IMG/VR virus record: IMGVR_UViG_3300028654_000001
Location: 448,572 to 512,571 of that record
DNA: 64,000 bases
Reading direction: 5' to 3' (one strand)
The notes beneath the pieces were generated by a model. That model had not been told where the DNA came from, did not search any database, and was given only the letters and a program-made list of their open reading frames with translations. Positions 2,696 to 53,932 of the stretch are shown piece after piece. Positions within the stretch are counted from its first letter, which is position 1, and each line of letters begins with the position of its first letter. The position numbers and the translations under genes were made by a program.

Positions 2696-4342
<1,647 letters not shown>

Positions 4343-9363: not shown

Positions 9364-9710
9364 TGGAAGTGCGGGGAATCGAACCCCGGTCCTTCAGTCG
9401 TCTGAGATCTCTTTCATTCACGTGCGTAGTTGCCACATCCCTGGCAACTGAGTTCGTGGATTCGGCCTACGACCTATTCTCCTGTTGATTTCATCAGAGG
9501 CTCCGGTGACCCGAGCCCCAAACTATCCCTAGTGGTTGGCAATCTTACCCGCTACCAAGACTATCTCGCGGAAGATCGGCCACAGTTACTCACGCAACCG
9601 CAGCATATGCGTTATCGTTCGCAATCACGTTTGCTTGATTGATCAAAGCGGGTCAAGCACCGCTTACACGCAAAAGATCCTTCCTTCCAAAGTCGAAACC
9701 TATCACTCCC
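9364..9710 (-). ncRNA. ssrA: tmRNA, tag (A)ANDNAYAAVA*
   Basis: 5' GGGAGTG-ATAGGTTTCGAC; 3' GACCGGGGTTCGATTCCCCG-CACTTCC-A with G3.U70; tag ORF 9622..9590. Confidence 0.95.
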
Positions 9711-11977: not shown

Positions 11978-12166
11978 TTACGCCAAACCTCTACTCTTTA
12001 GCTTGAATATCACCTGCATGACAGCAGGGTCATCCTTGCTTGGTAACTTGATCTTGTGCAGGATCTTGTACTTACCACTAGAATCAGTGGTATCTTGACG
12101 TTCGTCACTAGGACTCGACTGGCCTCGCAGCCAAGAGTCATTCTTTGGGTCAAACTTAATGTTCAT
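11978..12166 (-). CDS. hypothetical protein
   Basis: ATGA-coupled to upstream ART gene. Confidence 0.5.
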   Translation of the reverse strand: MNIKFDPKNDSWLRGQSSPSDERQDTTDSSGKYKILHKIKLPSKDDPAVMQVIFKLKSRGLA

Positions 12167-13353
12167 ATAACCCGCCCCTCATGAGCCCCACCCACAACCA
12201 ATATTTCAGCCTCAGTCTCGAGCTCTGGGTGTGTGATATTTGACATCAAGACTTTTTCTACTGGGATCTTAAATTCAAGTGCGGTGCCAAAGGCGGATGC
12301 ACGAGAAGAATCGTAACTGAAAGACGAGATGGACCTTGTGTCCAAACTGGCTTCCTGCCCTTTTTTAGACTTCTCGAGCCCTTGACCTTGAACCCCTCTG
12401 AACAGAGTTAGCTCTTTGATCCCCAAGTGCTTGTAGTAGGCCTGAGAGAAGTCATAGGCATCTTGTAGGTACTTCTTGAGTTCTTTGCTTTTAGCCCCAT
12501 CCTCACGGAATCCCTTAGCTTCATCCTCATCCTCTTTTGGAGTACGAGATCCACTAACCCCCCAGGATTCAACCGCTCCAACCATATTCTGAACAGACTC
12601 TGAATCAGCAAAGTCTCCCGCGATCCTCCACCCAGCAACAGCACCCCTACCGACTTTTTGAGCCTCAGCATCCTTTTTCGACAGGTATTGCTGGAAGTAC
12701 TCGCCGAGTTTATCGCCACCAGCCCATAGAGCTTGTTCCTGAGGGCTGAGACGATCAAAGGCCTTCTTAAACTTGTTAGGATACTGATCCCCAGGAGATC
12801 TCTTCTTCATATGGGCACTCTTGAAGGACTTGACTGCCTTAGTCATCTCAGCAGTGATCCTATCAAAGTGCTCCTTGTTTTCTGCTATGATCGCATCAAG
12901 TTTTTTGGCATCAGGCTTAAATGGATTGGTTGATACCTCTTCGTCGGAGTCACCCTTTGGTTTTGCCTCTGAAACTGGTTCCTTAGTTTCAGGCTTTTTA
13001 TCATCCTGATCTTCAGGATCCTTTGACCTGCCACCAGAGGTGTCCTCTTCCTTCTGCTTGCCAAGCCACTCATAGTACTCTTTTATGGCCTTAGAGTAGA
13101 AGCTAGGGTTCTTCAAAGCAGTACTAAAGGAGACTTCCTTGTTCTTCTTACGAGAATCAGAATCGGAGCTCGGGTTGGGTACTCTTCGCTTACCACCCTC
13201 TTGAGTGGAATCTAACCACTCTTTCCACCTAGGAGGGATCTTACCCTTCTTTGAAGACTCTTCACCTTCCTCCTCACCAGTGCTAAACGCAAGCTTGGTT
13301 TGGGCTCGAGCGTATCGAGCGGCAACACGAAGGATCAGGGCAGCTTCTGACAC
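12163..13353 (-). CDS. putative ADP-ribosyltransferase (R-S-ExE type) with N-terminal RVAARY motif
   Basis: C-terminal LTLFRGV...SISSFS...ASAFG...ETEAEILV; acidic/basic linker. Confidence 0.7.
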   Translation of the reverse strand: MSEAALILRVAARYARAQTKLAFSTGEEEGEESSKKGKIPPRWKEWLDSTQEGGKRRVPNPSSDSDSRKKNKEVSFSTALKNPSFYSKAIKEYYEWLGKQKEEDTSGGRSKDPEDQDDKKPETKEPVSEAKPKGDSDEEVSTNPFKPDAKKLDAIIAENKEHFDRITAEMTKAVKSFKSAHMKKRSPGDQYPNKFKKAFDRLSPQEQALWAGGDKLGEYFQQYLSKKDAEAQKVGRGAVAGWRIAGDFADSESVQNMVGAVESWGVSGSRTPKEDEDEAKGFREDGAKSKELKKYLQDAYDFSQAYYKHLGIKELTLFRGVQGQGLEKSKKGQEASLDTRSISSFSYDSSRASAFGTALEFKIPVEKVLMSNITHPELETEAEILVVGGAHEGRVI

Positions 13354-17196: not shown

Positions 17197-17406
17197 TTAC
17201 TGGTCAACAATCTCTACTTCACTCTCTTTCCACCAGTAGAGTGGAAAGTCCAACATCACATACCCTATGTAAGGTGGGTGATTTGGCATACTTGTAACAA
17301 CTCGTGTACTGGGTAATGGCTTTTCGATATCAAGCCCATTACGTAACAGGTAGTTATTCCAGGCCTCGGGTTTAATCTTTACGAGTGTACCTACTGAAAG
17401 ATCCAT
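17197..17406 (-). CDS. small SH3/KOW-like hypothetical protein
   Basis: LSVGTLVKIK..WWKESEVEIV; GGTGTA promoter 11 nt upstream. Confidence 0.6.
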   Translation of the reverse strand: MDLSVGTLVKIKPEAWNNYLLRNGLDIEKPLPSTRVVTSMPNHPPYIGYVMLDFPLYWWKESEVEIVDQ

Positions 17407-17604
17407 ACGGATCTATACACCATATCAGTGATAATTATCAGGACGCTGACAACTACTATCATGATGAAGATACTCACCTTGATAGCACCAAGAATCACAG
17501 TAACCACAGACTTGAACGGTGGGTTCCTTTTTGGGTTCCGACTTATGTTCCTTCAAAATCTCTGCTTCCATGGTAACCTCAACTGAGTCACAAAAAAAGA
17601 AGAT

Positions 17605-17848
17605 TGGTGGACAGGATCGGAATCGAACCGACAATCAACACATTGACCTCTTAGGACAACACGCTTCCCTAGCGACCTGGGGTCTCCATGCCATTCGGTG
17701 CTTCTGAAACCTTGGTCAAACCTTCCAGAGTTGTCAAGGCCCGAGCCGCGCCCTGCCTCGCTCCCCTCTTTCCAGCTATGCGTTGGGGAGTCAACCCAAT
17801 CACAACCTTGTTTTTAGTGGTGCCTTCCCAATTTAGGCTATCCAGCCC
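17605..17848 (-). ncRNA. 244-nt Ala-acceptor tRNA-like RNA with ~170-nt insert in place of anticodon arm
   Basis: 5' GGGCTGGA-TAGCCTAAATTGGGAAGGC; 3' GTCGGTTCGATTCCGAT-CCTGTCC-ACCA; G3.U70, A73. Confidence 0.75.
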
Positions 17849-18330
17849 ATAGTGGAACATGCCGGACTCGAACCGGCCACCTCTTGCCTGCCAGGCAAGC
17901 GCTCTCCCAGATGAGCTAATGCCCCATTCTTTCTACCGTGACCTACGTTAAGAGACCCAAATGTTGGGGTAAGCGAGTGACAGTTTGGACATAAGAAGGT
18001 CAGGTTGGTTTCGATTGAGTTGTGAGGATTTCCGTCTAGGTGCTCAACATTCACAGGGACCTTACCTGTTACCGGGTTCTTCTCAGCCCAATCACACCTA
18101 GTACAGTTTTCTCCGTACTTACTTATGAGGTACCTGCGAACATGACTTGAGACCCTAAGGTCTCGGCCATGACTGATGTTACCTGTTTCAAGACCCGACT
18201 TCCATCGATCAATGTACTCAAGGTACTGTTGCTCAAGCTGGCAGTAGTTCGAACAGTACTTGCTCCTGAGGTTGGTGACAGATTTGCCGCATATTGGGCA
18301 TGGTTTTCTATCCCTACGGGGTCTAGCCAT
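17833..18330 (-). CDS. HNH homing endonuclease (reads through tRNA-Ala)
   Basis: CTRCDW..VPVNVEHLDGN..NLTFLCPNCHSLTPTF. Confidence 0.88.
   Translation of the reverse strand: MARPRRDRKPCPICGKSVTNLRSKYCSNYCQLEQQYLEYIDRWKSGLETGNISHGRDLRVSSHVRRYLISKYGENCTRCDWAEKNPVTGKVPVNVEHLDGNPHNSIETNLTFLCPNCHSLTPTFGSLNVGHGRKNGALAHLGERLPGRQEVAGSSPACSTMGWIA
17853..17925 (-). tRNA. tRNA-Ala(GGC)
   Basis: G3.U70, loop CT-GGC-AG. Confidence 0.95.
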
Positions 18331-31105: not shown

Positions 31106-31188
31106 TGGGGCATGGTGGAGTTGAACCACTTAACCTGAGGCGACAGTTTTACAGACTGCTACTACTTCCGCGTAGTTAATCACACCCC
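31106..31188 (-). tRNA. tRNA-Tyr(GTA), 8/4 cloverleaf
   Basis: Acceptor GGGGTGTG/CATGCCCC, T stem GTGG/CCAC, loop CT-GTA-AA. Confidence 0.82.
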
Positions 31189-31359
31189 ATAGAGATTGGG
31201 TCTAGCTGCGGTTACGAGTCGATAGCGATCTGTGATTCCCATTGTCCTTTGCTTTCCTAACGAACTGACAAACCTATCCTGATGCCACTGTGTGTGGCAG
31301 ACGAAACTCTAGTTTGCACACAGTCTCTGTGTGGTGTGTTTTATTGGAAAAAGAGCCCT

Positions 31360-44222: not shown

Positions 44223-46045
44223 TGCGCACAATTGCAAGGGCCCCTGAGTGGGTTCTAGGAAGCAAACCTCCACTAAGTGGAGGTCATATGTGGGTTCCAC
44301 TTGGATCGACAGATCTAGTACCGCGCATCAATACCACTACTGGAATTATTGACAGCACAATTACAGTAGTAGGTGACCCTCAAGCAATAGTATGGGATGG
44401 GGGATCCTACATGTATGTGGCTGAAAAGGATAGTCAACTAGTCCAAAGAGTTAGTATCTTCAGATTAGCTATGGACACTACTACTAACATTGGGTCCCAT
44501 CCGGTTGAACTGGCTTGTGACGCCAACTTTGTGTATGCGGTTGGCGATGAGAACACACTCACCAGAATAAATATACTATCGGGGACCATCTTAGAGTCGG
44601 CTATCAATTTTAGTGGTAGTGATGGTGTCCCCAACAAAGTGGCCTGGGGCGGCAGCGATAGCATGTATGTCACTGCCAATAATATTAACCCAAACACGAA
44701 TAACCTCCTGAAAGTCTCGACGTCAAGCTGGCTTGACTTTTCTTCAATACGTTTACTGAACGCCCCCAACCCGTGGGGTGTTGCACGGGATGGATCAGAT
44801 CACATATACACAGCGAATTTTGGTCAAGGAACTGTCTCGAGGATCATTGCCTCCACTGGGGTCCTTGACCTGGTCATTCCTGTTGGTCAATCTCCAATTG
44901 ACCTTACATGGGATGGGGGTTCCTACATCTATGTAGTGGACCAGAGTGGGTCAGTTTACAGAATTCTGATCTCAACGGGAGTTGTTGACTCAATCATTCC
45001 TGTTGGAGAAAACTCATATAGGATCGCGTGGGATGGTGCAGATCATATGTATGTCACTAACAGTGGCACCAACACGGTATCACGTATCCTGATCTCTTCA
45101 GGAGCTGTTGATGCAACCATTAGTTTGGGTACCTCTAGCCCCTCAGGTATTGCATGGGATGGTGGTTCCTACATGTATGTTGCCTTTGAAAGCCCTGCAA
45201 ACATAGTCAAAAGGATTTTGATCTCTTCCGGTGCCGTAGTAGGTGGGTCTATCCCTGTGGGTAACGAACCAGTTGTTATTGCATGGGATGGTGGTTCCTA
45301 CATGTATGTTGTTAACCAAAATGACAACACAGTTACCAGGATAGCTATATCAGACTTGAGTACCACTACGATCATTAGTGCTGAAACCAACCCCTTCGGT
45401 GTTGCATGGGATGGTGGTTCCTACATGTATGTCGTTGGTCGTGGTGGGAATACTGCTCACCGGATTCAAGTATCGACGGGTTCTCTACTTGGCACTGCAA
45501 TAACACTTGGGAACTCTCCACGTGCTATCATGTGGGATGGTGGAACCCAGATGTTCGCTGTCAATAGTGTTGACGCTACAGTGTCCAGAATAGATATTAC
45601 CGGAACACCCTCAGTTGACATGACCATCCCGCTTCTCAACGACTTTGAGGGTGTTGCATGGGATGGCTCAGATCACATTTATGTGGTTAGTTCATTAACC
45701 AACCAAGTGATCAGAATCACATTGTTAGATAGTATTGATGCTAGGATCTCTGTAGGGAGTACTCCAAGGAAAGCCGCGTGGGATGGTGCAGATCATATGT
45801 ATATTACCAACTCAGGTGACGGAACCGTTTCACGTATACTAATCTCTTCAGGAGAGGTTGACGCCACTATCACTGTTGGGACAAGCCCAGATGAGATCGC
45901 ATGGGACGGAGCGGATCATATGTATGTGAACAACAGAGGTAGTAACAATGTTTCACGTATACTAATCTCCTCTGGAACGGTTGATGCCACTATTAGTGTG
46001 GCTGGTGTCCCGAGTGGCCTCGCATGGGATGGCCCTCTAAGGTAA
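44222..46045 (+). CDS. YVTN/YncE-like beta-propeller repeat protein
   Basis: ~14 repeats of P..IAWDG..YMYV.N....VSRI; consistent with two 7-bladed propellers. Confidence 0.85.
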   Translation: MRTIARAPEWVLGSKPPLSGGHMWVPLGSTDLVPRINTTTGIIDSTITVVGDPQAIVWDGGSYMYVAEKDSQLVQRVSIFRLAMDTTTNIGSHPVELACDANFVYAVGDENTLTRINILSGTILESAINFSGSDGVPNKVAWGGSDSMYVTANNINPNTNNLLKVSTSSWLDFSSIRLLNAPNPWGVARDGSDHIYTANFGQGTVSRIIASTGVLDLVIPVGQSPIDLTWDGGSYIYVVDQSGSVYRILISTGVVDSIIPVGENSYRIAWDGADHMYVTNSGTNTVSRILISSGAVDATISLGTSSPSGIAWDGGSYMYVAFESPANIVKRILISSGAVVGGSIPVGNEPVVIAWDGGSYMYVVNQNDNTVTRIAISDLSTTTIISAETNPFGVAWDGGSYMYVVGRGGNTAHRIQVSTGSLLGTAITLGNSPRAIMWDGGTQMFAVNSVDATVSRIDITGTPSVDMTIPLLNDFEGVAWDGSDHIYVVSSLTNQVIRITLLDSIDARISVGSTPRKAAWDGADHMYITNSGDGTVSRILISSGEVDATITVGTSPDEIAWDGADHMYVNNRGSNNVSRILISSGTVDATISVAGVPSGLAWDGPLR

Positions 46046-46063
46046 ACCAACCAAACTTGTGAC

Positions 46064-46531
46064 TTACTTTTGGAATGGTAGCACTCTAACTAAAACCTCT
46101 TGAAACTGTGGGTTACTTAATGCCCCAAATCTCTTCAATCTAATGAGTCTCATACAAGTACAACCTGAGTTCCCAGTAAGAAAGTGAAGGGCGAGGGCAT
46201 TTACGAGACCTGACCGGTTAAGTCCAGCCATGCACGTTGTCAAAACATTTTTCCCACTATGAACCGCGGCAGCAATCTCTTTACTTGTACTGATAGCCCT
46301 TAGAAGCTCATTACGGGTTGGCTCTCTGAAGGGGTCATCAGCATTAGGGGAGTAGATCACCGAAACGGAATCAGGAAATAGTGATCTTGGGGGCTGCCAT
46401 TCCTCAGCACACAAAACTAATACATTGAAGTTATACCTAACCAAGTATTTTGAGATGGAATGCCTGGAACCTTGCCATAGGTTTGGTACAATCTCGCTTA
46501 GGTCTTCAATCTTACCCATGCCAACTACCAT
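46064..46531 (-). CDS. dual-specificity (CX5R) phosphatase
   Basis: EIVPNLWQGS, VLTTCMAGLNRSG, NPQF. Confidence 0.88.
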   Translation of the reverse strand: MVVGMGKIEDLSEIVPNLWQGSRHSISKYLVRYNFNVLVLCAEEWQPPRSLFPDSVSVIYSPNADDPFREPTRNELLRAISTSKEIAAAVHSGKNVLTTCMAGLNRSGLVNALALHFLTGNSGCTCMRLIRLKRFGALSNPQFQEVLVRVLPFQK

Positions 46532-46612
46532 ACTAACACTCTAGATACTAGGTATCAACTGAGCCCTTGTTAAGAGAACAATTTTTCAATAAACCTTTGA
46601 CATAAGGTTGTT

Positions 46613-47236
46613 GTGACAGAACCAAAAGCACCCCCACCGCGGCCAATGAACCAGTTTAGAGCTACAGGTACCCACTATGATTTACCTAAAAGGGAACCAG
46701 ATCTTGAGATTGTTGATGTAGGGGCTCGTCAGGAATTACAAGAGCTCAACAGACAACTTGAGTTAGTCAGAGAGAATAACGAAGAGCTAGAGAGAGAGAA
46801 CAAGGATCTTGAGCACAAGGTTGACATACTCACAATCCGCCTCAATAACTTTGAATTCTCTACACTTGAGCGCCTGGCTAAGCCAAGTCAAAGCTCGCTG
46901 CCGGCCTCAACCAGAATCAAGAAGTGGACAGTAATAGGAAGTATCATTGCAGCTCTGATAGCAGCAGGCGGAGCAGTCACCTCTTCGGTCATCAATAGTA
47001 GGTCGAACACTCTAAGCAAAGCTCAATTGGCTACTCAAGCTGATGAGACCAGAAGACTCATTTCAGCCGCACAAAAAAGTACAGAAGAGTCATTCAATGC
47101 GGGTGCTCGAGAAGGTGCTCGTTTGACTGCGATTGATTATGAAAAGAACAAACCCATCCCACCCATCAAGAAACCACCAACACCTGTAAAAAAGAGAGTG
47201 GCACCAAAGCCTCCGGTAGTAATCCAGGTACCTTGA
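46613..47236 (+). CDS. coiled-coil membrane-anchored protein
   Basis: Heptad region, TM IGSIIAALIAAGGAV, Pro/Lys tail. Confidence 0.55.
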   Translation: MTEPKAPPPRPMNQFRATGTHYDLPKREPDLEIVDVGARQELQELNRQLELVRENNEELERENKDLEHKVDILTIRLNNFEFSTLERLAKPSQSSLPASTRIKKWTVIGSIIAALIAAGGAVTSSVINSRSNTLSKAQLATQADETRRLISAAQKSTEESFNAGAREGARLTAIDYEKNKPIPPIKKPPTPVKKRVAPKPPVVIQVP

Positions 47237-47261
47237 TGCCACTCGTCACTTAGTCAACTCG

Positions 47262-48911
47262 TTAGAGTTGAACTTGATTGATAGTCTCGATCCAGTGCCC
47301 ATTGCCTGTACCAGTGATGAACGCGTTCATCACTTTGAACACCTCATCGCTAAAACCCCCGATGTTGAGAACATCAACATTATCCTTCACTTGGGTGGTC
47401 GTGTGCGGGGTGATGTCAATGCAAACGAGCTTTGCATTCGGGTTACGGGTCTTGAGCTTCTCCCATTCGTCAGCCATTGAAGTCGGCTTCGGGCCTCGAC
47501 TCCCCCAGTAGGATTCATAGACCCTACCCATCCCGCCACCATGACTCCATGACTCATAATCGGAAACGAAGATCACAACATCTACCTTCCTATTATCTTT
47601 GTTCATCACCTGTAGAGGAGAGGCACAGTTCGTGGACCCACCGCCGACTGCCGCAAGAATCCCGGCGTTCTTCATGATGGTGTTGTTTGAGTTCAACTTC
47701 ACATCAGTCCGAACATCACCTTCGAACGGGTACACTTGAGCACGAGGATTCTTCCTCAGCAAGCAGGAAGAGATCAAAGCTGCCACATCGACACACATTA
47801 CGGTGGTTGTTGAGCCCTTTCGCTCACCCGTAACCGGGCTCCGCATTGACCCAGAGACGTCCGTGCAGATAGCTACCTCGAGACCCTCGAAGGCAGGAAC
47901 GTTAACCGTTGCCACCTCCATAGCTACCTCGAGAGCATGCTCAATCTCCTTGGGCATGTTGACCGGCTTCTCATCCTTGTGCCAGGTGCTACCCTCATTG
48001 ATGGCTTTGTAAGCCGTCATGATCTGGTATGGAAAGACATTCGCCTTCCTGATGAGATCCGTATGGTTTAGCTTCTCTACCACTAGCTTCACCATCTTGG
48101 GATCAGTGAAGACACCGTGACGAGCAAAGGTGTTGAGACTCCTGAAAGTCTGGAACCAAGAAGCCTTAGTAGCCACAGCTTTCCAGTCCTCCGGGCTTAA
48201 CTGGAGACCGAGCAGCATCTCGAAAGGTGCGTTCGGTATCTCACCTACCGGGGAAGCCTTGAAGGCCTCATACGAGGCAATCAGAGCTGGCACGGCCTCA
48301 CTCACAGTGAAGGGCAGACCTTCGAACTTACCCTCCTTCTTACCGATCAGGTAAGCATAGAGGGCAGACCTCTGAGCGGACGTCGGGGCTACCCGAGCCA
48401 TCTTTACGATATCACCCAGGGTCGGTTTATCACCAACTGACTGGAAGAAGATCTGCTCATCAGTCCTGGAATTAAACCAGGCCGTGACCATTCTCTTGAG
48501 CCGCTGAGCTGACAGATTATGCCGCCCAAAAGACCCAGACCGGATCATCTGCGCGAAGTTACGCAGCATCTTGCCATTATTGATGACCCTCGGGAACACC
48601 TGAGCACAGAGGTCAGGATCCCTAGCTGCTAGGTAGGAGACCAGGGCTGCCGGCATGTCCTTCATGAACCCACTCTCGCGGGCATAGACTGCCACCTTGG
48701 CCAGGAACAATGGATGTGCCTGACGTGCAAGGGTCAGAACCTGAGCCAACTGATCTTCGGCCTTCGTGTAATAAGTGTTGTTAAAACAACCAGTTACACT
48801 TAACTGTGCAAGAGCCGCTTCAGCTTCCATGCTGTAGGCCGCCGCCCCAGCATAGTTCACTACCGTCGCATCTTGGACAGACTTACGCCCTGCTTTCTTC
48901 GACGACTTCAT
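47262..48911 (-). CDS. Ro60/Rsr TROVE-domain RNA-binding protein
   Basis: LAQLSVTGCFNNTYY, AVYARESGFMKDMPA, GKMLRNF, VFPYQ, VWA DVSGSM, GGGSTNC, SDYESW, IGGFSD. Confidence 0.95.
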   Translation of the reverse strand: MKSSKKAGRKSVQDATVVNYAGAAAYSMEAEAALAQLSVTGCFNNTYYTKAEDQLAQVLTLARQAHPLFLAKVAVYARESGFMKDMPAALVSYLAARDPDLCAQVFPRVINNGKMLRNFAQMIRSGSFGRHNLSAQRLKRMVTAWFNSRTDEQIFFQSVGDKPTLGDIVKMARVAPTSAQRSALYAYLIGKKEGKFEGLPFTVSEAVPALIASYEAFKASPVGEIPNAPFEMLLGLQLSPEDWKAVATKASWFQTFRSLNTFARHGVFTDPKMVKLVVEKLNHTDLIRKANVFPYQIMTAYKAINEGSTWHKDEKPVNMPKEIEHALEVAMEVATVNVPAFEGLEVAICTDVSGSMRSPVTGERKGSTTTVMCVDVAALISSCLLRKNPRAQVYPFEGDVRTDVKLNSNNTIMKNAGILAAVGGGSTNCASPLQVMNKDNRKVDVVIFVSDYESWSHGGGMGRVYESYWGSRGPKPTSMADEWEKLKTRNPNAKLVCIDITPHTTTQVKDNVDVLNIGGFSDEVFKVMNAFITGTGNGHWIETINQVQL

Positions 48912-49093
48912 GATTATCTCTCCATTTCCACCGAAGTGGAACAAGTTGCCCCAATAATTGAGGACCGTCACTTATACACTACCTTTTGAGACGTGCAAGG
49001 TAAAATCGACAGGAACCTCAAAAAGGGTTATCCCACAATGTGGCCAAGTTATGAAAATTACTTGACTTTTTGAGACGCCCTTCGGTGTAGAGA

Positions 49094-50026
49094 GTGGACA
49101 TGGCTGAAGATCCGTCCACCCTGATAGGCCAGGGAGTTGCTGACGCTTTAGGAATGCCCTTCGAAACCCGGAAACCGGATGATCCTTTCCTGGTCAACTG
49201 GGATGGTACTTATCAGGCTAGTGAGTATCATCAACTAAGACCTGGACAGTGGACTGACGATACAATGATGGCCAAGATCGTCATGGAGAGCCTATACATC
49301 TGTGGTGGGTTTTACCCAAGGGACATCGCCCAAAGGTACCAACACTGGTACCTCGCTGGTCCTCTACGAGGCATGGGGACTACCACAAAGAAGGCAATGC
49401 AGAACCTTCGAGCTGGAATGTCTTGGAGCGAAAGTGGGATAGTTGGGGCTGAAGGAAACGGAACAGCCATGAGGGCAGCTCCGTTCGGAGCATTTTACCA
49501 AGAGGATCCTTTTACGGCTGCCCAGTTCGCTCGGATGGAAGCCAATATTACTCACAAGTCTCTTGAAGCTGAGGAGGGTTCCGCCGCGGTAGCTGTAGCC
49601 GTCTCCCTACTCTGGACAGGAGCGGAACCTAAGGAAGTTGTTGCAAAAACGATGGAGTACCTTCGGGAGTCTAAGGTGAAGCTTGCTTTGAATAGGCTTG
49701 TGTTCTATCAAAAAAGCAATGACGTCTCCGCCAGTGAAGCCCTCAAACTCTTTGGTACAAAGGCACACGTTGTTCAAACTGTACCATCAGCATTCGCAGC
49801 CTTTGTCCTCACGGCTTCTTATGAAGAAGCCGTTCTCACATCCATTAGATCGGGAGGGGACACGGATACAACAGCCGCCATTGCTGGGGCCCTTGCCGGA
49901 ACCTACTACGGATTCAAGGCCATCCCTAAAAAGTACCGAGAAGGACTCGAGGACTGGGAACATCTGAGAAAGATTGAGTCCAAGATTAACGTTGGGCCAA
50001 ATACCAGTGTTCTCTGGAGACTATGA
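49094..50026 (+). CDS. ADP-ribosylglycohydrolase (DraG/ARH family)
   Basis: ADALGMPFE, WTDDT, GNGTAMRAAP, ITH, GGDTDTTAAIAGALAG. Confidence 0.95.
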   Translation: MDMAEDPSTLIGQGVADALGMPFETRKPDDPFLVNWDGTYQASEYHQLRPGQWTDDTMMAKIVMESLYICGGFYPRDIAQRYQHWYLAGPLRGMGTTTKKAMQNLRAGMSWSESGIVGAEGNGTAMRAAPFGAFYQEDPFTAAQFARMEANITHKSLEAEEGSAAVAVAVSLLWTGAEPKEVVAKTMEYLRESKVKLALNRLVFYQKSNDVSASEALKLFGTKAHVVQTVPSAFAAFVLTASYEEAVLTSIRSGGDTDTTAAIAGALAGTYYGFKAIPKKYREGLEDWEHLRKIESKINVGPNTSVLWRL

Positions 50027-50031
50027 GTTAG

Positions 50032-50103
50032 AGACCCCAGGGGGGTTCGAACCCCCGCATATGGAGTTAGAGTCCGGTGTTCTGCCAATTGAACTATGGG
50101 GTC
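50032..50103 (-). tRNA. amber suppressor-type tRNA(CTA)
   Basis: Acceptor GACCCCA/TGGGGTC, D and T arms canonical, loop CT-CTA-AC, only 3-bp anticodon stem. Confidence 0.75.
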
Positions 50104-50108
50104 GTGAA

Positions 50109-50288
50109 TCATTTTTTCACTGGTGGATCTGATGGAAGACTCTTAATCTTCGCACGCGCTAACTTCCATGCCTTAGTTACCACCCACGAAAGTGATCTCT
50201 CAAGCCGTGCAGCCTCAGACTTAATTTCGTCATGCATATCTGTAGGAAAGTAAAGACTTTGCTTCTGATTATTGTTGGCGTCAACCAT
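50109..50288 (-). CDS. TIGR04563 (MXAN_4361/4362)-like small ribbon-helix-helix protein
   Basis: 59 aa, not in ORF track: KQSLYFPTDMHDEIKSEAARLERSLSWVVTKAWKLARAKIKSLP. Confidence 0.8.
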   Translation of the reverse strand: MVDANNNQKQSLYFPTDMHDEIKSEAARLERSLSWVVTKAWKLARAKIKSLPSDPPVKK

Positions 50289-50296
50289 GTGGTTGA

Positions 50297-50617
50297 CTAT
50301 ACCCCAAAGGCTAGGGGTAGGTTACTCAAAAGTGATCTGGCTTTCGGTTCGAGAGCTAGAGCGGTCAGTTCATTATCACGATCGGGCTCTCGAAATAATG
50401 AACATCGAACACCCATTCGACTAGCCTTGGAGGCTAGTCGAATTAGATCTTGTTCGTCCGGCACAACAAGGAGTGCCAAGGTGTTCGAGCTCGAGTGCCA
50501 CTGAGAGGCCCGCTCCTTGTGCTCAACAAGAAACTCAGTCATCGCATGACAGGCTTGAACTGCTTGTTGTCCAAGAGGTAAATCTAAACGGGTCACAAGA
50601 TACAGCTTCTCTGCCAT
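50297..50617 (-). CDS. peptidyl-tRNA hydrolase PTH2-like protein
   Basis: KLYLVTRLDL..GQQAVQACHA..FREPD..LTALAL. Confidence 0.8.
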   Translation of the reverse strand: MAEKLYLVTRLDLPLGQQAVQACHAMTEFLVEHKERASQWHSSSNTLALLVVPDEQDLIRLASKASRMGVRCSLFREPDRDNELTALALEPKARSLLSNLPLAFGV

Positions 50618-50790
50618 GGGCCAACCTCAGATAAAGGGCTTAAAATCCTCAATAGGACCTAGATTAAACCGAGTCACCTTCGAATTCACGCTGGGGGAGA
50701 AGATCTCAAAAAGCTTCGCCAACCAATCGATCTTCGACTGCTTCTTCTGGGACTCTCCCTGAAGCTTGGCAATCTCTTCGGATACGGTGG

Positions 50791-51861
50791 TCATGCTGCC
50801 TCTTTAGCTGCCTGGAAGGCTTGCTGCATTCCCTCTACGGAATGCTCGAACCACTTGTCTTCCACGTGGCTTCCGTCCTTGTAGATAACCAGCTTGATGG
50901 GACCTGTTTGCATCCCCCACTCCAGGTTAATTAGGATCCCTTCCTTACTCTTGTGCGTCACAATATTACGACAATAGCGCTGCTCTTGCACCTTGAAGTG
51001 GGGACACCAATTCTCGTGAGTGACACCAATTCCACAATGAGCTTCAGGGGAAAGAGCGGGATCCTTCACGAGCTCTATGTAGGCCAGGTACAGCGGGTCT
51101 TCAGCCTTGAACTTAGCCATCCTCTCATCGTACAGGCGTTGGGATTCAGCTTGCTGCTCTCGATGAACCCTCTCTTCTTCCGAAACCTCCTCGCGGACTA
51201 GGATCAGGTTAGGACCCTCTCGACGGAAGATTTTGGTTGCCCTCCACTCTCCTGGCTGGGCTACCTCCTCTTCGTCATCGTCATCGGTTTCAGTGGAGTA
51301 GGTCTGGATGGTTCCGTCCACTTCGAAGGTAGGCCACCTGCCATCCTCGTAGCAACACTCGTCACATTCAAGGACGGGCCACCCATTCATTGGGTCCGAG
51401 AAGTCATAGAACCGGAACTCGTAGGGGCACGCCCAACAGCAACCAAGGACTGTGAGGAGCTTGGTTCTCGGGTCCAATCGGTGCTTAACCCAACAGAAGC
51501 CCCAGCCATGCTCAGCCTCTTCAGGCAAGGAGTCCTTCCGCTTCCCGGTGTCCAACTCGAGCACGGTGCTCCCTTGGTAGTCAGCACCACAGACCAGATA
51601 CGGGTGTCCGTTCGGATGACCTATCCAAGAAAATGGGAACTGAGAGTAGTTCCGCTGAACCTCAAACAGAGGCTTGTCTTCGCCGACGCGGTAGACAAGT
51701 CCTTGAGTGAAGTCCCAACACCCTTCCTTCGTTGAGTAACTTCGGATGACAAGCTTGAACTTCCCATCCGGTGAGAGGTGCTCAGTGAACTTGTCACTTG
51801 CATTCTCGGGCTTGAAGTACTTGGCGAGTTCAGCCAGTCTTTCTTCATACTTGGTAGTCAT
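50791..51861 (-). CDS. hypothetical protein
   Basis: Long ORF, coupled to upstream gene. Confidence 0.65.
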   Translation of the reverse strand: MTTKYEERLAELAKYFKPENASDKFTEHLSPDGKFKLVIRSYSTKEGCWDFTQGLVYRVGEDKPLFEVQRNYSQFPFSWIGHPNGHPYLVCGADYQGSTVLELDTGKRKDSLPEEAEHGWGFCWVKHRLDPRTKLLTVLGCCWACPYEFRFYDFSDPMNGWPVLECDECCYEDGRWPTFEVDGTIQTYSTETDDDDEEEVAQPGEWRATKIFRREGPNLILVREEVSEEERVHREQQAESQRLYDERMAKFKAEDPLYLAYIELVKDPALSPEAHCGIGVTHENWCPHFKVQEQRYCRNIVTHKSKEGILINLEWGMQTGPIKLVIYKDGSHVEDKWFEHSVEGMQQAFQAAKEAA

Positions 51862-52522: not shown

Positions 52523-53932
52523 TCATGGGATTCCTTCGGAATTTGAAGCTATGCCAAGTTTCCTATTTGGAGATACCTTGGTAGTAAGCTTCCGGCTCGG
52601 AGCTACGAGCTCGTCTGACAGCCTTCCAGAGGAACTGTCCCGGCGAAGCCGGTATCGCTCTCTCAAGAGGGCCTTCACTTCGGAGGGGTAATCATCGAGA
52701 CCAATCTGTTTGTCCTCGGAACGTCCGAGCAAATTGATCCCTCCAACCACATCCGCGTGTGAAATCCTGCCGCATCCACGGCATCGAAACCTTGTCCCAG
52801 ATCGGTTTGACCTGGAGATGTACCCACATGAGGGGCACATCTGTGATGAATAAGCTGGGTTTACTACAATTGTAGGAGCCTTCGTGCTTAATGAGTGATG
52901 CAAGGCCCGATAAGCAAATCTCTTTTGACCACTACAACCAGAAAGATTCAGATCCTCAATGACGAAAGCATGACCTGGATACTTAGTAACTAGTTTGTTA
53001 GCAACAGTACCCGTTGCTGTCTTGATCAAACCCGATAGTTGATCTTCGAGACGGTTCAACCTAGGAGAGTTCTCTTTGAAACCTTGTCGTTGTCGATTGG
53101 CTCGAAGAGCTCTTACTCTCGTATAGAGTTCATTAAACCTAGGCTTAATGGAAGCCCCATAAAGATCCCCTTTAGATGTAGCCGCTATTACATTGAGACC
53201 AATATCAACCCCAATCCTTGGCATCCCAGGATAAAATTTAGGCTCTTCGATGATCTTCTTCTCTAGGACCTCAACTCGCCAACGACCCCTTTTGTCCTTA
53301 CGGATGAGGCACCCGTTGACGATCTCTTCTGGGGACTTGATGTGAGGGTTAGCTACAATTGGAACCCAAACCCGATGATTTTTCTTGAGGTTTGAGAATC
53401 CAAGCCACCAGGGAGAGAGCCTTGTTTCATTGACCTTGATGTCGCTCGTATGGATCGACATCCGTATCCCGATTCGGTTCGAAGACGTAGGACTCTTCCC
53501 ACTTACCTTTGGATCAAGTAAAAGAGACCAATAGAGGTCAATGGCTTCTTGAGTGATTATATCTGTTGGCCGGTCTACGTTGTACTTCCCGATAGTGAAG
53601 AGTTGAAAGCGGATGGCCTCAATGATCTGATCTTCTTTGAAGAATTTCTTTATGTGCTTCTTGATTCTTCTGGTATACAGAGAAGTCGTCCAAGTTAGAA
53701 CTATTTCTACGGCGTGCTGTTGACAGGCCATCACGAGATTGGTTGAAAGAACCTTCTCGACTGGGAAGAAACGAAGGATCTCTCCGCGAGGGACACGCAT
53801 CCTCCTGGATTGAATCATCAAGTCAATACAGGATTGAAGATACCGACGATATTCGATATGAAGGGCTTCGAGAGCCTGGATTTTTTCTGAGTTGGTCTCA
53901 GGGTGAAAGTAGAGGACGCGGGAGCGCTTCAC
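52523..53932 (-). mobile_element. tnpB: TnpB (IS200/IS605-family RNA-guided nuclease), no TnpA
   Basis: RuvC-I IGVDIGLN, RuvC-II VIEDLN, AYSSQMCPSCG..FRCRGCG, RuvC-III HADVVGGINL. Confidence 0.9.

What the first reader, a model, noticed from the sequence alone, without database searches (positions are those of the whole stretch)
17605..17848. tmRNA-like architecture: alanine-acceptor tRNA shell with a ~170-nt structured insert
Seen: acceptor GGGCTGG/CCTGTCC with G3.U70, A73 and encoded CCA, an Ala-type D loop (TTGGGA) and a canonical T loop. The anticodon arm is replaced by a nested structure (TTGAC/GTCAA, CTCCCC/GGGGAG, GACAAC/GTTGTC, TCTGGAA/TTTCAGA). It sits among the three Ala tRNAs. No group I P7 motifs are present. 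One frame stays open for about 50 codons to a TAG, without an AA degron. Established: G3.U70 is sufficient for AlaRS charging, as in tmRNA. Inference: a new aminoacylatable RNA class (second rescue RNA, EF-Tu/AlaRS decoy, or tRNA with an unknown type of intron), separate from the genuine tmRNA at 9364.
Basis: partly seen in the sequence, partly recalled or inferred. Interest (0 to 1): 0.82.

Follow-up and report, generated by a model that had tools for sequence, protein, structure and literature searches.

The report
tRNA-Ala-derived structured RNA in huge phages
A 244-base gene in a giant phage's tRNA cluster encodes a conserved RNA that keeps the body of an alanine tRNA but has a large folded domain where the anticodon arm should be; it fits no known RNA family and its function is unknown.

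Summary
The feature is real. Window 17848..17605 (- strand) is a 244-nt RNA gene with an intact tRNA acceptor stem, D arm and T arm, but no anticodon arm. The window is a 512-kb rhizosphere phage contig.

Eight homologues sit at the same spot, right after tRNA-Ala(GGC), in related huge-phage contigs. Together they support one nested fold: 98% of cells pair, 20 of 63 pairs show compensatory changes, and 0 of 500 shuffles reach that.

An 8-bp helix (RNA positions 64-71 with 206-213) takes the anticodon-stem position and opens into two arms. A further 36-nt two-hairpin insert sits at the D/anticodon hinge.

- **Not a tmRNA:** the 50-codon frame is broken by stops in every relative, the D arm is complete, and no tmRNA model hits.
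- **Not an intron-bearing tRNA:** the inferred anticodons disagree between relatives, the splice-site bases are not conserved, Rfam group I gives no hit, and no intron-less allele exists.
- **Alanine signals are incomplete:** G3.U70, A73 and G20 occur in 4 of 6 lineages; two lineages have G3-C70.
- **Lost at least twice** in relatives.

Best reading: a tRNA-Ala-derived stable RNA of a new family, in which the tRNA body provides processing and stability and the insert does the work.

The parts
17605..17848 (-). Whole RNA gene, 244 nt. RNA position p = 17849 - window coordinate.
   Evidence: Homologues score 235-304 bits with covariance model R1, against at most 35 bits for ordinary tRNAs.
17842..17848 (-). 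Acceptor stem, 5' strand (p1-7), including G3
   Evidence: Pairs with p234-240. 62 of 63 cells pair, with compensatory changes at 4:69, 5:68 and 6:67.
17605..17615 (-). Acceptor stem 3' strand (p234-240, U70 at p238), discriminator A73 (p241) and encoded CCA (p242-244)
   Evidence: A73 is invariant. U70 is present in 7 of 9 copies. CCA is encoded in 7 of 9.
17822..17838 (-). D arm (p11-27) with the G18/G19-type GG. One extra base (A8) lies between the acceptor stem and U8.
   Evidence: 34 of 36 cells pair; loop positions invariant.
17786..17821 (-). Hinge insert (p28-63): a CAC/GUG mini-hairpin with an invariant A5 loop, and hairpin p52-55/60-63
   Evidence: The hairpin covaries: GGGU/ACCC, GGGCU/AGCCC in L026, GGAGA/UCUCC in L016.
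17778..17785 (-). Long helix, 5' strand (p64-71)
   Evidence: Pairs with p206-213. 97% of cells pair; six pairs vary on one side only, with pairing kept in all but one cell, and 71:206 covaries.
17636..17643 (-). Long helix, 3' strand (p206-213). It occupies the place of the 3' anticodon-stem strand. p207-217 is invariant.
17719..17777 (-). Arm A (p72-130): helices 74-75/127-128, 80-83/119-122, 89-94/109-114 and 96-99/103-106
   Evidence: Compensatory changes at 75:127, 80:122, 81:121, 90:113, 92:111 and 94:109.
17644..17718 (-). Arm B (p131-205): helices 131-135/201-205, 137-139/194-196, 143-144/188-189, 156-159/173-176 and 161-163/169-171. Includes the invariant block p172-187.
   Evidence: Compensatory changes at 132:204, 133:203, 134:202, 137:196, 144:188, 161:171 and 162:170.
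17616..17632 (-). T arm (p217-233) with a UUCGAUU loop
   Evidence: 45 of 45 cells pair. 218:232 and 219:231 covary.
17852..17925 (-). tRNA-Ala(GGC), 3 nt upstream. It is the constant 5' neighbour in all relatives.
17425..17571 (-). Small Cys/His-rich ORF (48 aa) starting 33 nt after the CCA. It is the constant 3' neighbour, and it stays in place where the RNA gene was deleted.
17926..18330 (-). HNH-endonuclease-like ORF upstream of tRNA-Ala(GGC). It is context only and not part of the element: relatives that carry the RNA have no gene at this spot.
   Evidence: HNH motif read by eye in the translation; Pfam gave no hit. Absent here in L014 and the other relatives. A joint in a related contig skips 17928-18372.

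Best explanation
This is a stable, structured non-coding RNA that arose from a duplicated tRNA-Ala gene in the phage's tRNA array.

Shown:
- The acceptor stem, D arm, T arm and the tRNA core positions (U8, A14, an A15:U48 pair, G18G19, the T loop) are intact.
- There is no anticodon arm. An 8-bp helix takes the anticodon-stem position and opens into a Y-shaped 134-nt domain of two arms.
- A 36-nt two-hairpin insert sits at the D/anticodon hinge.
- The fold is kept by compensatory changes across six phage lineages.

Inferred mechanism:
- The RNA is transcribed with the array.
- RNase P cuts at G1, a few bases after the 3' end of tRNA-Ala(GGC).
- The 3' end is matured to the encoded CCA.
- The tRNA body gives correct processing, resistance to nucleases and access to tRNA-binding factors.
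- The invariant loops and strands of the insert (p34-38, p148-160, p172-187, p207-216) carry the function by binding a phage or host partner.

The window's copy carries the full alanine set (G3.U70, A73, G2-C71, G20, CCA), so host AlaRS probably charges it. Because two lineages have lost G3.U70, charging is not the conserved core of the function. The RNA cannot decode, having no anticodon loop, and it carries no message.
For: - Eight homologues lie at the same syntenic position.
- The consensus fold pairs 98.2% of cells. 20 of 63 pairs show compensatory changes, 0 of 500 shuffles reach that, and slid controls give 0-2.
- Model R1 separates members (235-304 bits) from all tRNAs (at most 35 bits). 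The best non-members are tRNA-Ala(UGC) genes.
- A tRNA-Ala(UGC) in another phage contig, L012, shares the identical 28-nt T-arm and acceptor 3' end.
- The element is 73-89% identical between phages, against 67-79% for the adjacent tRNA-Ala(GGC).
- tRNA core positions are invariant.
- There is no conserved ORF and no Rfam family.
Against: - There are no expression data; no RNA run was listed.
- The partner and activity of the insert are unknown.
- The gene was deleted in L023, L024/L025 and L015, so it is dispensable in some phages.
- Only nine copies in six lineages are available, so some helices (151-152/180-181, 156-159/173-176 versus the alternative hairpin 175-178/184-187) rest on invariant bases. 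Pseudoknots cannot be excluded.
Confidence: 0.6

Rival explanations
1. It is an alanine-charged, non-decoding tRNA mimic whose function needs the aminoacyl end. It could be a second ribosome-rescue RNA working like tmRNA, or a decoy or sensor for AlaRS or EF-Tu.
For: G3.U70, A73, G2-C71, G20 and encoded CCA are present in the window, and G3.U70 is present in 7 of 9 copies. G1-G3 and A73 are invariant. The helix in the anticodon-stem position recalls tmRNA helix P2.
Against: - The open frame is not conserved and no tag peptide exists.
- The full D arm and the hinge insert occupy the region that, from established knowledge of tmRNA, SmpB binds.
- ARAGORN and the Rfam tmRNA models do not hit.
- L016 and L019 have G3-C70, and L019 and L026 lack CCA.
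- The phage already has a tmRNA.
- The gene was lost in relatives.
Confidence: 0.17
2. It is a tRNA gene interrupted by a self-splicing or enzyme-removed intron (a small group I intron or a new type) that yields a normal tRNA after splicing.
For: In the window the 5' exon ends in U and the intron ends in G. An HNH endonuclease gene lies 80 nt upstream.
Against: - The same parse gives anticodons ACC, CCT and GCT in relatives.
- p33 is U, A or G; p192 is G in two copies and otherwise U or A.
- The proposed anticodon stem pairs in 27 of 45 cells and the P1-like helix in 41 of 63.
- The strand before the variable loop pairs with p64-71, with covariation.
- The helix topology is a nested Y, not P3-P9.
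- Rfam group I gives no hit at E<=10.
- No intron-less allele exists; the losses remove the gene.
- The HNH gene is absent from relatives that keep the RNA.
Confidence: 0.04
3. It is a Y-RNA-like partner of the phage's own Ro60 protein, with the tRNA-like module playing the role it has in bacterial YrlA RNAs.
For: - The window encodes a full-length Ro60 orthologue at 48971..47265.
- Bacterial and phage Y RNAs mimic tRNA and carry a CGAA motif (PMC4201824, PMC12135203).
- The element has CCGAA in an internal loop of arm B (p151-155).
Against: - The gene is 29 kb from Ro60, whereas Y RNAs are normally adjacent.
- The topology is opposite: here the RNA ends form the acceptor stem, while in YrlA they form the Ro-binding stem.
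- CGAA is a 4-mer expected by chance, and it reads CAAA in L016.
- The Rfam YrlA score is 18.5 bits against a threshold of 69, and the match spans two genes, a known false positive for tandem tRNAs.
- A stem-loop with CGAA lies directly upstream of the Ro60 gene and is a more conventional candidate.
Confidence: 0.1
4. It is a decaying tRNA-Ala pseudogene that picked up junk sequence and has no function.
For: It lacks an anticodon, it was deleted in several relatives, and it has a U5.U68 mismatch in the window.
Against: The insert is as conserved as or more conserved than real tRNAs. 20 pairs carry compensatory changes. There are long invariant blocks.
Confidence: 0.03

Closest known systems
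tmRNA (SsrA; Rfam RF00023 and its variants)
   Same: An alanine-type acceptor stem with G3.U70, A73 and CCA, and a T arm. A long helix leaves the tRNA-like part where the anticodon stem would be, and a large structured body lies between the two halves of the tRNA-like part.
   Different: This RNA has a complete D arm and an extra hinge insert. It has no conserved reading frame or tag and is much smaller (244 nt). No covariation for a pseudoknot was seen, though the test had low power. tmRNA models do not hit it. G3.U70 is not universal in the family.
Bacterial and phage Y RNAs of the YrlA type (Rfam RF02553; PMC4201824)
   Same: A non-coding RNA built around an authentic tRNA-like D/T/acceptor module and joined to a second module. 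Such RNAs are found in phages with tRNA clusters, and a Ro60 gene is present in this phage.
   Different: In YrlA the RNA ends form the Ro60-binding stem and the acceptor-like stem is capped by a loop. Here the ends form the acceptor stem with CCA. This gene is not next to the Ro60 gene, and the 5' GNCGAAN0-1G motif is absent.
tRNA genes with group I introns in the anticodon loop
   Same: A tRNA shell interrupted by a structured insert of 150-250 nt, with a homing-endonuclease-like gene nearby in the window.
   Different: The exons cannot rebuild an anticodon arm. The splice-site bases and a P1 helix are not conserved, the helix topology differs from P3-P9, and no intron-less allele exists.
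Engineered 'tRNA scaffold' RNAs (from my own knowledge, not checked here)
   Same: A foreign structured RNA replaces the anticodon arm of a tRNA, so that the cell processes and stabilises it like a tRNA.
   Different: Those are man-made. This one is natural and conserved, and it also carries an insert at the hinge.

Membership tests
tmRNA | tRNA-like domain with G3.U70, a T arm and a CCA end | tested here: met
   Present in the window. Across the family G3.U70 is in 7 of 9 copies and CCA in 7 of 9.
tmRNA | Conserved internal reading frame ending in a stop and encoding a tag | tested here: not met
   The window's frame is interrupted by stops in all eight relatives, and no short frame is shared.
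tmRNA | Reduced D region without a D stem (the SmpB site), and pseudoknots around the frame | tested here: not met
   The D stem pairs in 34 of 36 cells. All covariation is explained by a nested fold. A scan of unpaired columns gave no pseudoknot signal, though its power is low.
tmRNA | Recognised by ARAGORN or Rfam tmRNA models | tested here: not met
   ARAGORN tmRNA mode found nothing, even at a lowered threshold. The best Rfam clan hit is 9.5 bits on the T arm only.
tRNA with a group I intron | Exons join to give a tRNA with a 7-nt anticodon loop and the same anticodon in orthologues | tested here: not met
   The inferred anticodons are ACC, CCT and GCT, with different intron borders. The proposed anticodon stem pairs in 27 of 45 cells.
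tRNA with a group I intron | U.G pair at the 5' splice site in P1, and a terminal G at the 3' splice site | tested here: not met
   p33 is U, A or G. p192 is G in only 2 of 9 copies. The P1-like helix pairs in 41 of 63 cells.
tRNA with a group I intron | P3-P9 catalytic core | tested here: not met
   Rfam RF00028 gives no hit at E<=10. The covarying helices form a nested Y with no P3/P7 arrangement.
Y RNA / YrlA | Encoded next to a Ro60 gene | tested here: not met
   The Ro60 orthologue lies at 48971..47265, 29 kb away.
Y RNA / YrlA | Terminal stem formed by the 5' and 3' ends, carrying GNCGAAN0-1G near the 5' end | tested here: not met
   The ends form a 7-bp acceptor stem. Only an internal ACCGAAUG is found, and it is not conserved in L016.
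Y RNA / YrlA | Binding to Ro60 | not testable with these tools
   Needs a gel-shift or pull-down assay.
Canonical tRNA-Ala | Acceptor, D and T arms with the core tertiary positions, and G3.U70 with A73 | tested here: met
   The nearest ordinary tRNAs by model R1 are tRNA-Ala(UGC) genes.
Canonical tRNA-Ala | A 5-bp anticodon stem with a 7-nt loop, U33 and an NGC anticodon | tested here: not met
   No such arm exists in any copy; the position is taken by helix 64-71/206-213.
Aminoacylatable RNA (AlaRS substrate) | Actual charging with alanine | not testable with these tools
   The sequence signals are present in the window only as a prediction. An AlaRS assay is needed.

The most novel reading that the evidence does not exclude
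This is a new class of chargeable but non-decoding tRNA-like RNA. Host AlaRS loads the window-type copies and EF-Tu carries them, and the Y-shaped domain then acts on the ribosome or on a tRNA-dependent enzyme. That would give the phage a translation-linked function that neither tRNAs nor tmRNA provide. The G3-C70/G1.U72 lineages would then be a second functional state, or would use another charging enzyme.
Probability: 0.2. Interest if true: 0.85.

Novelty: new variant of a known kind. Interest (0 to 1): 0.62.

Why it matters
tRNA mimics with a second functional module are rare, and each has revealed new biology: tmRNA for ribosome rescue, and Y RNAs for RNA decay with Ro60. This is a natural RNA that keeps a complete, probably chargeable tRNA-Ala body while swapping the anticodon arm for a conserved 134-nt domain. 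It is carried by 0.3-0.5-Mb soil and wetland phages that bring nearly a full translation toolkit.

It gives a well-defined object, with a covariation-backed fold and natural G3.U70-plus and G3.U70-minus variants. That makes it possible to test how giant phages manipulate host tRNA-handling machinery. It also shows that tRNA arrays of huge phages hide RNA genes that standard tRNA finders skip or mislabel.

Tried and rejected
- **Rfam:** gathering thresholds on the whole window; E<=10 on 17400-18000, 45500-51000 and 31000-64000. Nothing for the element.
- **ARAGORN tmRNA mode at a lowered threshold:** nothing.
- **ARAGORN intron mode:** it gives a call, but the call is not consistent between relatives.
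- **Single-sequence folding:** no better than shuffles (z = +0.98), and the MFE fold is wrong in most helices.
- **GenBank phage BLAST:** only tRNA-Ala matches to the neighbouring gene, and no relative of the phage.
- **IMG/VR pattern scans (five) and one protein scan:** only the source contig itself.
- **GTDB genome scan with the invariant blocks:** nothing.
- **RNA sequencing runs:** none was listed, so splicing and expression could not be tested.
- **My own group I P1 idea (p27-33 with p42-48):** rejected by relatives.
- **Similarity of the insert to the phage's tmRNA or to anything else in the window:** none.
- **Co-occurrence with Ro60 via contig lengths:** uninformative, because the relatives' contigs do not appear in the hit list.
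- **Covariation scan for pseudoknots:** only artefacts of one divergent sequence.
- **Literature searches for a described equivalent:** none found.
- **More relatives:** the look-up cap for encoding contigs was reached, so none could be fetched.

Full report
**Source and setting**

The window is 100% identical to part of IMGVR_UViG_3300028654_000001, a 512,571-bp phage contig from a rhizosphere metagenome. On the - strand it carries 42 ARAGORN tRNA genes and a tmRNA (96 bits to Rfam RF00023), most of them in an array from about 9 to 31 kb. The finding lies inside this array. It sits 3 nt downstream of tRNA-Ala(GGC) (17925..17852) and upstream of a small Cys/His-rich ORF, tRNA-Ala(UGC) and tRNA-Ala(CGC).

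**The observation**

I number the RNA as p = 17849 minus the window coordinate. Read on the - strand, it has these parts:

- A 7-bp acceptor stem with G3.U70 and a U5.U68 mismatch, followed by A73 and an encoded CCA.
- A D arm (GCCU/AGGC) with a GG-containing loop.
- A standard T arm.

ARAGORN and Rfam do not call it at default settings. At E<=10, Rfam gives only a 9.5-bit T-arm match to a tmRNA model. It also gives an 18.5-bit YrlA match that spans the T arm of the upstream tRNA and the D arm of this gene. The YrlA authors themselves flag that kind of match as a false positive for tandem tRNAs. So the tRNA shell and the ~190-nt interruption are real.

**Relatives**

Contigs from related samples showed diverged copies. 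They gave the first compensatory change, U218-A232 to C-G in the T stem, and a copy in which U5 becomes G.

A degenerate pattern for the 3' end found one full homologue in JGI metagenomes (L014). It also found a tRNA-Ala(UGC) in another phage contig (L012) with the identical 28-nt T-arm and acceptor 3' end.

The conserved 159-aa protein upstream of tRNA-Ala(GGC) led to 12 more syntenic loci from contigs of up to 473 kb. BLAST and ARAGORN showed the element in L014, L016, L017, L018, L019 (identical to L020 over the element), L021, L022 and L026. It is always 1-4 nt after tRNA-Ala(GGC).

The element is 73-89% identical to the window copy. The adjacent tRNA-Ala(GGC) is 67-79% identical, and the flanking protein gene is 62-81% identical at the DNA level.

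**The fold**

RNAalifold on the nine sequences gives one nested structure. I turned it into covariance model R1 and used the model to realign the members. On that alignment:

- 98.2% of cells form standard pairs.
- 20 of 63 pairs have changes on both sides.
- 0 of 500 shuffles reach the observed values.
- Sliding the partner strand by 1-3 columns leaves 0-2 such pairs.

The alignment was fitted to the model, which favours the structure. The same helices and compensatory changes are already visible in the plain MAFFT alignment.

The helices are:

| Part | Pairing (RNA positions) |
|---|---|
| Acceptor stem | 1-7 / 234-240 |
| D arm | 11-14 / 24-27 |
| Hinge insert (28-63) | mini-hairpin 30-32 / 46-48 with an invariant A5 loop; hairpin 52-55 / 60-63 |
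| Long helix | 64-71 / 206-213 |
| Arm A | 74-75 / 127-128, 80-83 / 119-122, 89-94 / 109-114, 96-99 / 103-106 |
| Arm B | 131-135 / 201-205, 137-139 / 194-196, 143-144 / 188-189, 151-152 / 180-181, 156-159 / 173-176, 161-163 / 169-171 |
| Variable loop | 214-216 (3 nt) |
| T arm | 217-221 / 229-233 |

The 3' strand of the long helix lies exactly where a 3' anticodon-stem strand would lie. It is invariant together with the variable loop (p207-217). Its 5' partner changes only in ways that keep pairing.

Blocks p172-187 and most of p148-160 are also invariant. For that reason, helices made only of those bases, and the alternative hairpin 175-178 / 184-187, cannot be told apart.

Measured on the alignment:

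- UUGAC/GUCAA pairs in 30 of 45 cells.
- GACAAC/GUUGUC pairs in 40 of 54.
- UCUGGAA/UUUCAGA pairs in 53 of 63, with two positions broken in four relatives. Its one compensatory pair (122:144) is explained as well or better by 80:122 and 144:188.
- CUCCCC/GGGGAG is compatible (51 of 54) but has no double changes, and it clashes with three covarying helices.

**Why it is not a tmRNA**

- The ~50-codon frame is open only in the window. In every relative, stops interrupt it, and indels shift the frame.
- No short frame with a shared stop exists.
- The D arm is complete, and an extra domain sits at the hinge, the region that SmpB occupies on tmRNA (established knowledge).
- ARAGORN tmRNA mode finds nothing even at a lowered threshold.
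- The insert has no similarity to the phage's own tmRNA.

**Why it is not an intron-bearing tRNA**

- With introns allowed, ARAGORN calls tRNA-Arg(CCT) with a 159-nt intron in the window. In relatives it calls Gly(ACC), Arg(CCT) or Ser(GCT), with different borders.
- The base before the putative 5' splice site is U, A or G.
- The putative terminal G is kept in only 2 of 9 copies.
- The proposed anticodon stem pairs in 27 of 45 cells.
- My own P1-like helix pairs in 41 of 63.
- The covarying helices form a nested Y, not a P3-P9 core.
- Rfam group I gives no hit.

Relatives without the element do not carry an intron-less tRNA. L023 keeps the first 18 nt joined to the last 8 nt, an internal deletion. 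L024 and L025 lost the whole gene by recombination between the CCACCA ends of the two tandem genes. In L015, an HNH gene replaces both tRNA-Ala(GGC) and the element.

The HNH-like ORF next to the window's copy is missing from relatives that keep the RNA, so it is an unrelated mobile insertion.

**Alanine identity**

The window, the L014 group, L022 and L026 have G1-C72, G2-C71, G3.U70 and A73. The window and the L014 group also have G20. L016 and L019 have G3-C70 with G1.U72. L019 and L026 do not encode CCA.

By model R1, the ordinary tRNAs closest to the shell are tRNA-Ala(UGC) genes. Origin from tRNA-Ala is therefore well supported, and charging of the window copy is plausible from established AlaRS rules. 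Charging cannot be the conserved core of the family's function.

**The Ro60 lead**

The window encodes a full-length Ro60 orthologue at 48971..47265 (Pfam TROVE plus the Ro60 vWA domain). Its many homologues are named 60 kDa SS-A/Ro.

Bacterial and phage Ro60 proteins bind Y RNAs that mimic tRNA and carry a CGAA-type motif (PMC4201824, PMC12135203). The element has CCGAA in an internal loop. Against a link:

- The motif is short and changes in L016.
- The RNA has the opposite topology to YrlA.
- It lies 29 kb from the Ro60 gene.
- A stem-loop with CGAA sits directly upstream of the Ro60 gene.

I keep this as a low-probability rival that a binding assay could settle.

**Conclusion**

The best-supported reading is a new family of tRNA-Ala-derived structured RNA. 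It is confined, as far as the searches reached, to one clade of huge soil, peat and wetland phages.

- *Shown:* the shell, the fold, the conservation, the lack of a message or an anticodon, and the repeated loss.
- *Inferred:* tRNA-type processing by RNase P and 3' maturation, stabilisation by the tRNA body, probable alanylation of the window type, and an effector role for the invariant parts of the insert.

The function itself remains open. I put 0.6 on 'stable tRNA-bodied effector RNA' and about 0.17 on a function that truly depends on the aminoacyl end. The intron, Ro60-partner and pseudogene readings score lower.

Noticed in passing
window 47265-48971 (- strand), with the upstream intergenic region 48972-49093: The phage encodes a full-length Ro60/TROVE orthologue. 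The intergenic region upstream of it folds into a stem-loop that carries an ACCGAAGGG (CGAA) motif and a perfect 9-bp CUCAAAAAG/CUUUUUGAG stem. This is a possible Y-RNA-like gene. Its folding energy is not significant (z = -1.4), and Rfam YrlA does not hit it.
   Followed up: partly
window 17926-18330 (- strand): An HNH-endonuclease-like ORF lies directly upstream of tRNA-Ala(GGC). Its open frame runs on through the tRNA to 17833. Syntenic relatives have no gene at this spot, and a related contig joins 17927 to 18373, so it is a recent mobile insertion. The 69-aa ORF at 17197-17406 is likewise missing from L014.
   Followed up: partly
L023:4547-4577; L024:4540-4560; L025:1275-1295: These are traces of loss of the RNA gene. 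L023 keeps its first 18 nt fused to its last 8 nt. L024 and L025 lost it cleanly by recombination between the CCACCA ends of the tandem tRNA-Ala(GGC) and the element.
   Followed up: yes
window 31106-31189 (- strand): This is a likely class II tRNA-Tyr (loop CUGUAAA, anticodon GUA) with an odd D arm. ARAGORN misses it, and Rfam sees it only as a sub-threshold tRNA-Sec match (32.7 bits). tRNA-His is absent from the window, although relatives have one just upstream of the syntenic block.
   Followed up: partly
window 50031-50103 (- strand): A tRNA with anticodon CUA, labelled Pyl by ARAGORN, is an amber suppressor. It hints that the phage reads TAG as a sense codon in some genes.
   Followed up: no
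window 9364-9710 (- strand): This is a genuine phage tmRNA (96 bits). Its predicted tag, VADLPRDSLGSG, does not end in the usual hydrophobic Ala-Ala degron.
   Followed up: no
window 12166-13353 (-), 49094-50023 (+), 52526-53932 (-), 2699-4342 (-): Other cargo in the window: a DRAT-like ADP-ribosyltransferase, an ADP-ribosylglycohydrolase next to the Ro60 gene, a TnpB/Cas12f-like protein and a GroEL-type chaperonin.
   Followed up: no
L012:6265-6340: A tRNA-Ala(UGC) in an unrelated 113-kb contig shares the identical 28-nt T-arm and acceptor 3' end with the element. This fits an origin of the shell from a phage tRNA-Ala gene.
   Followed up: partly
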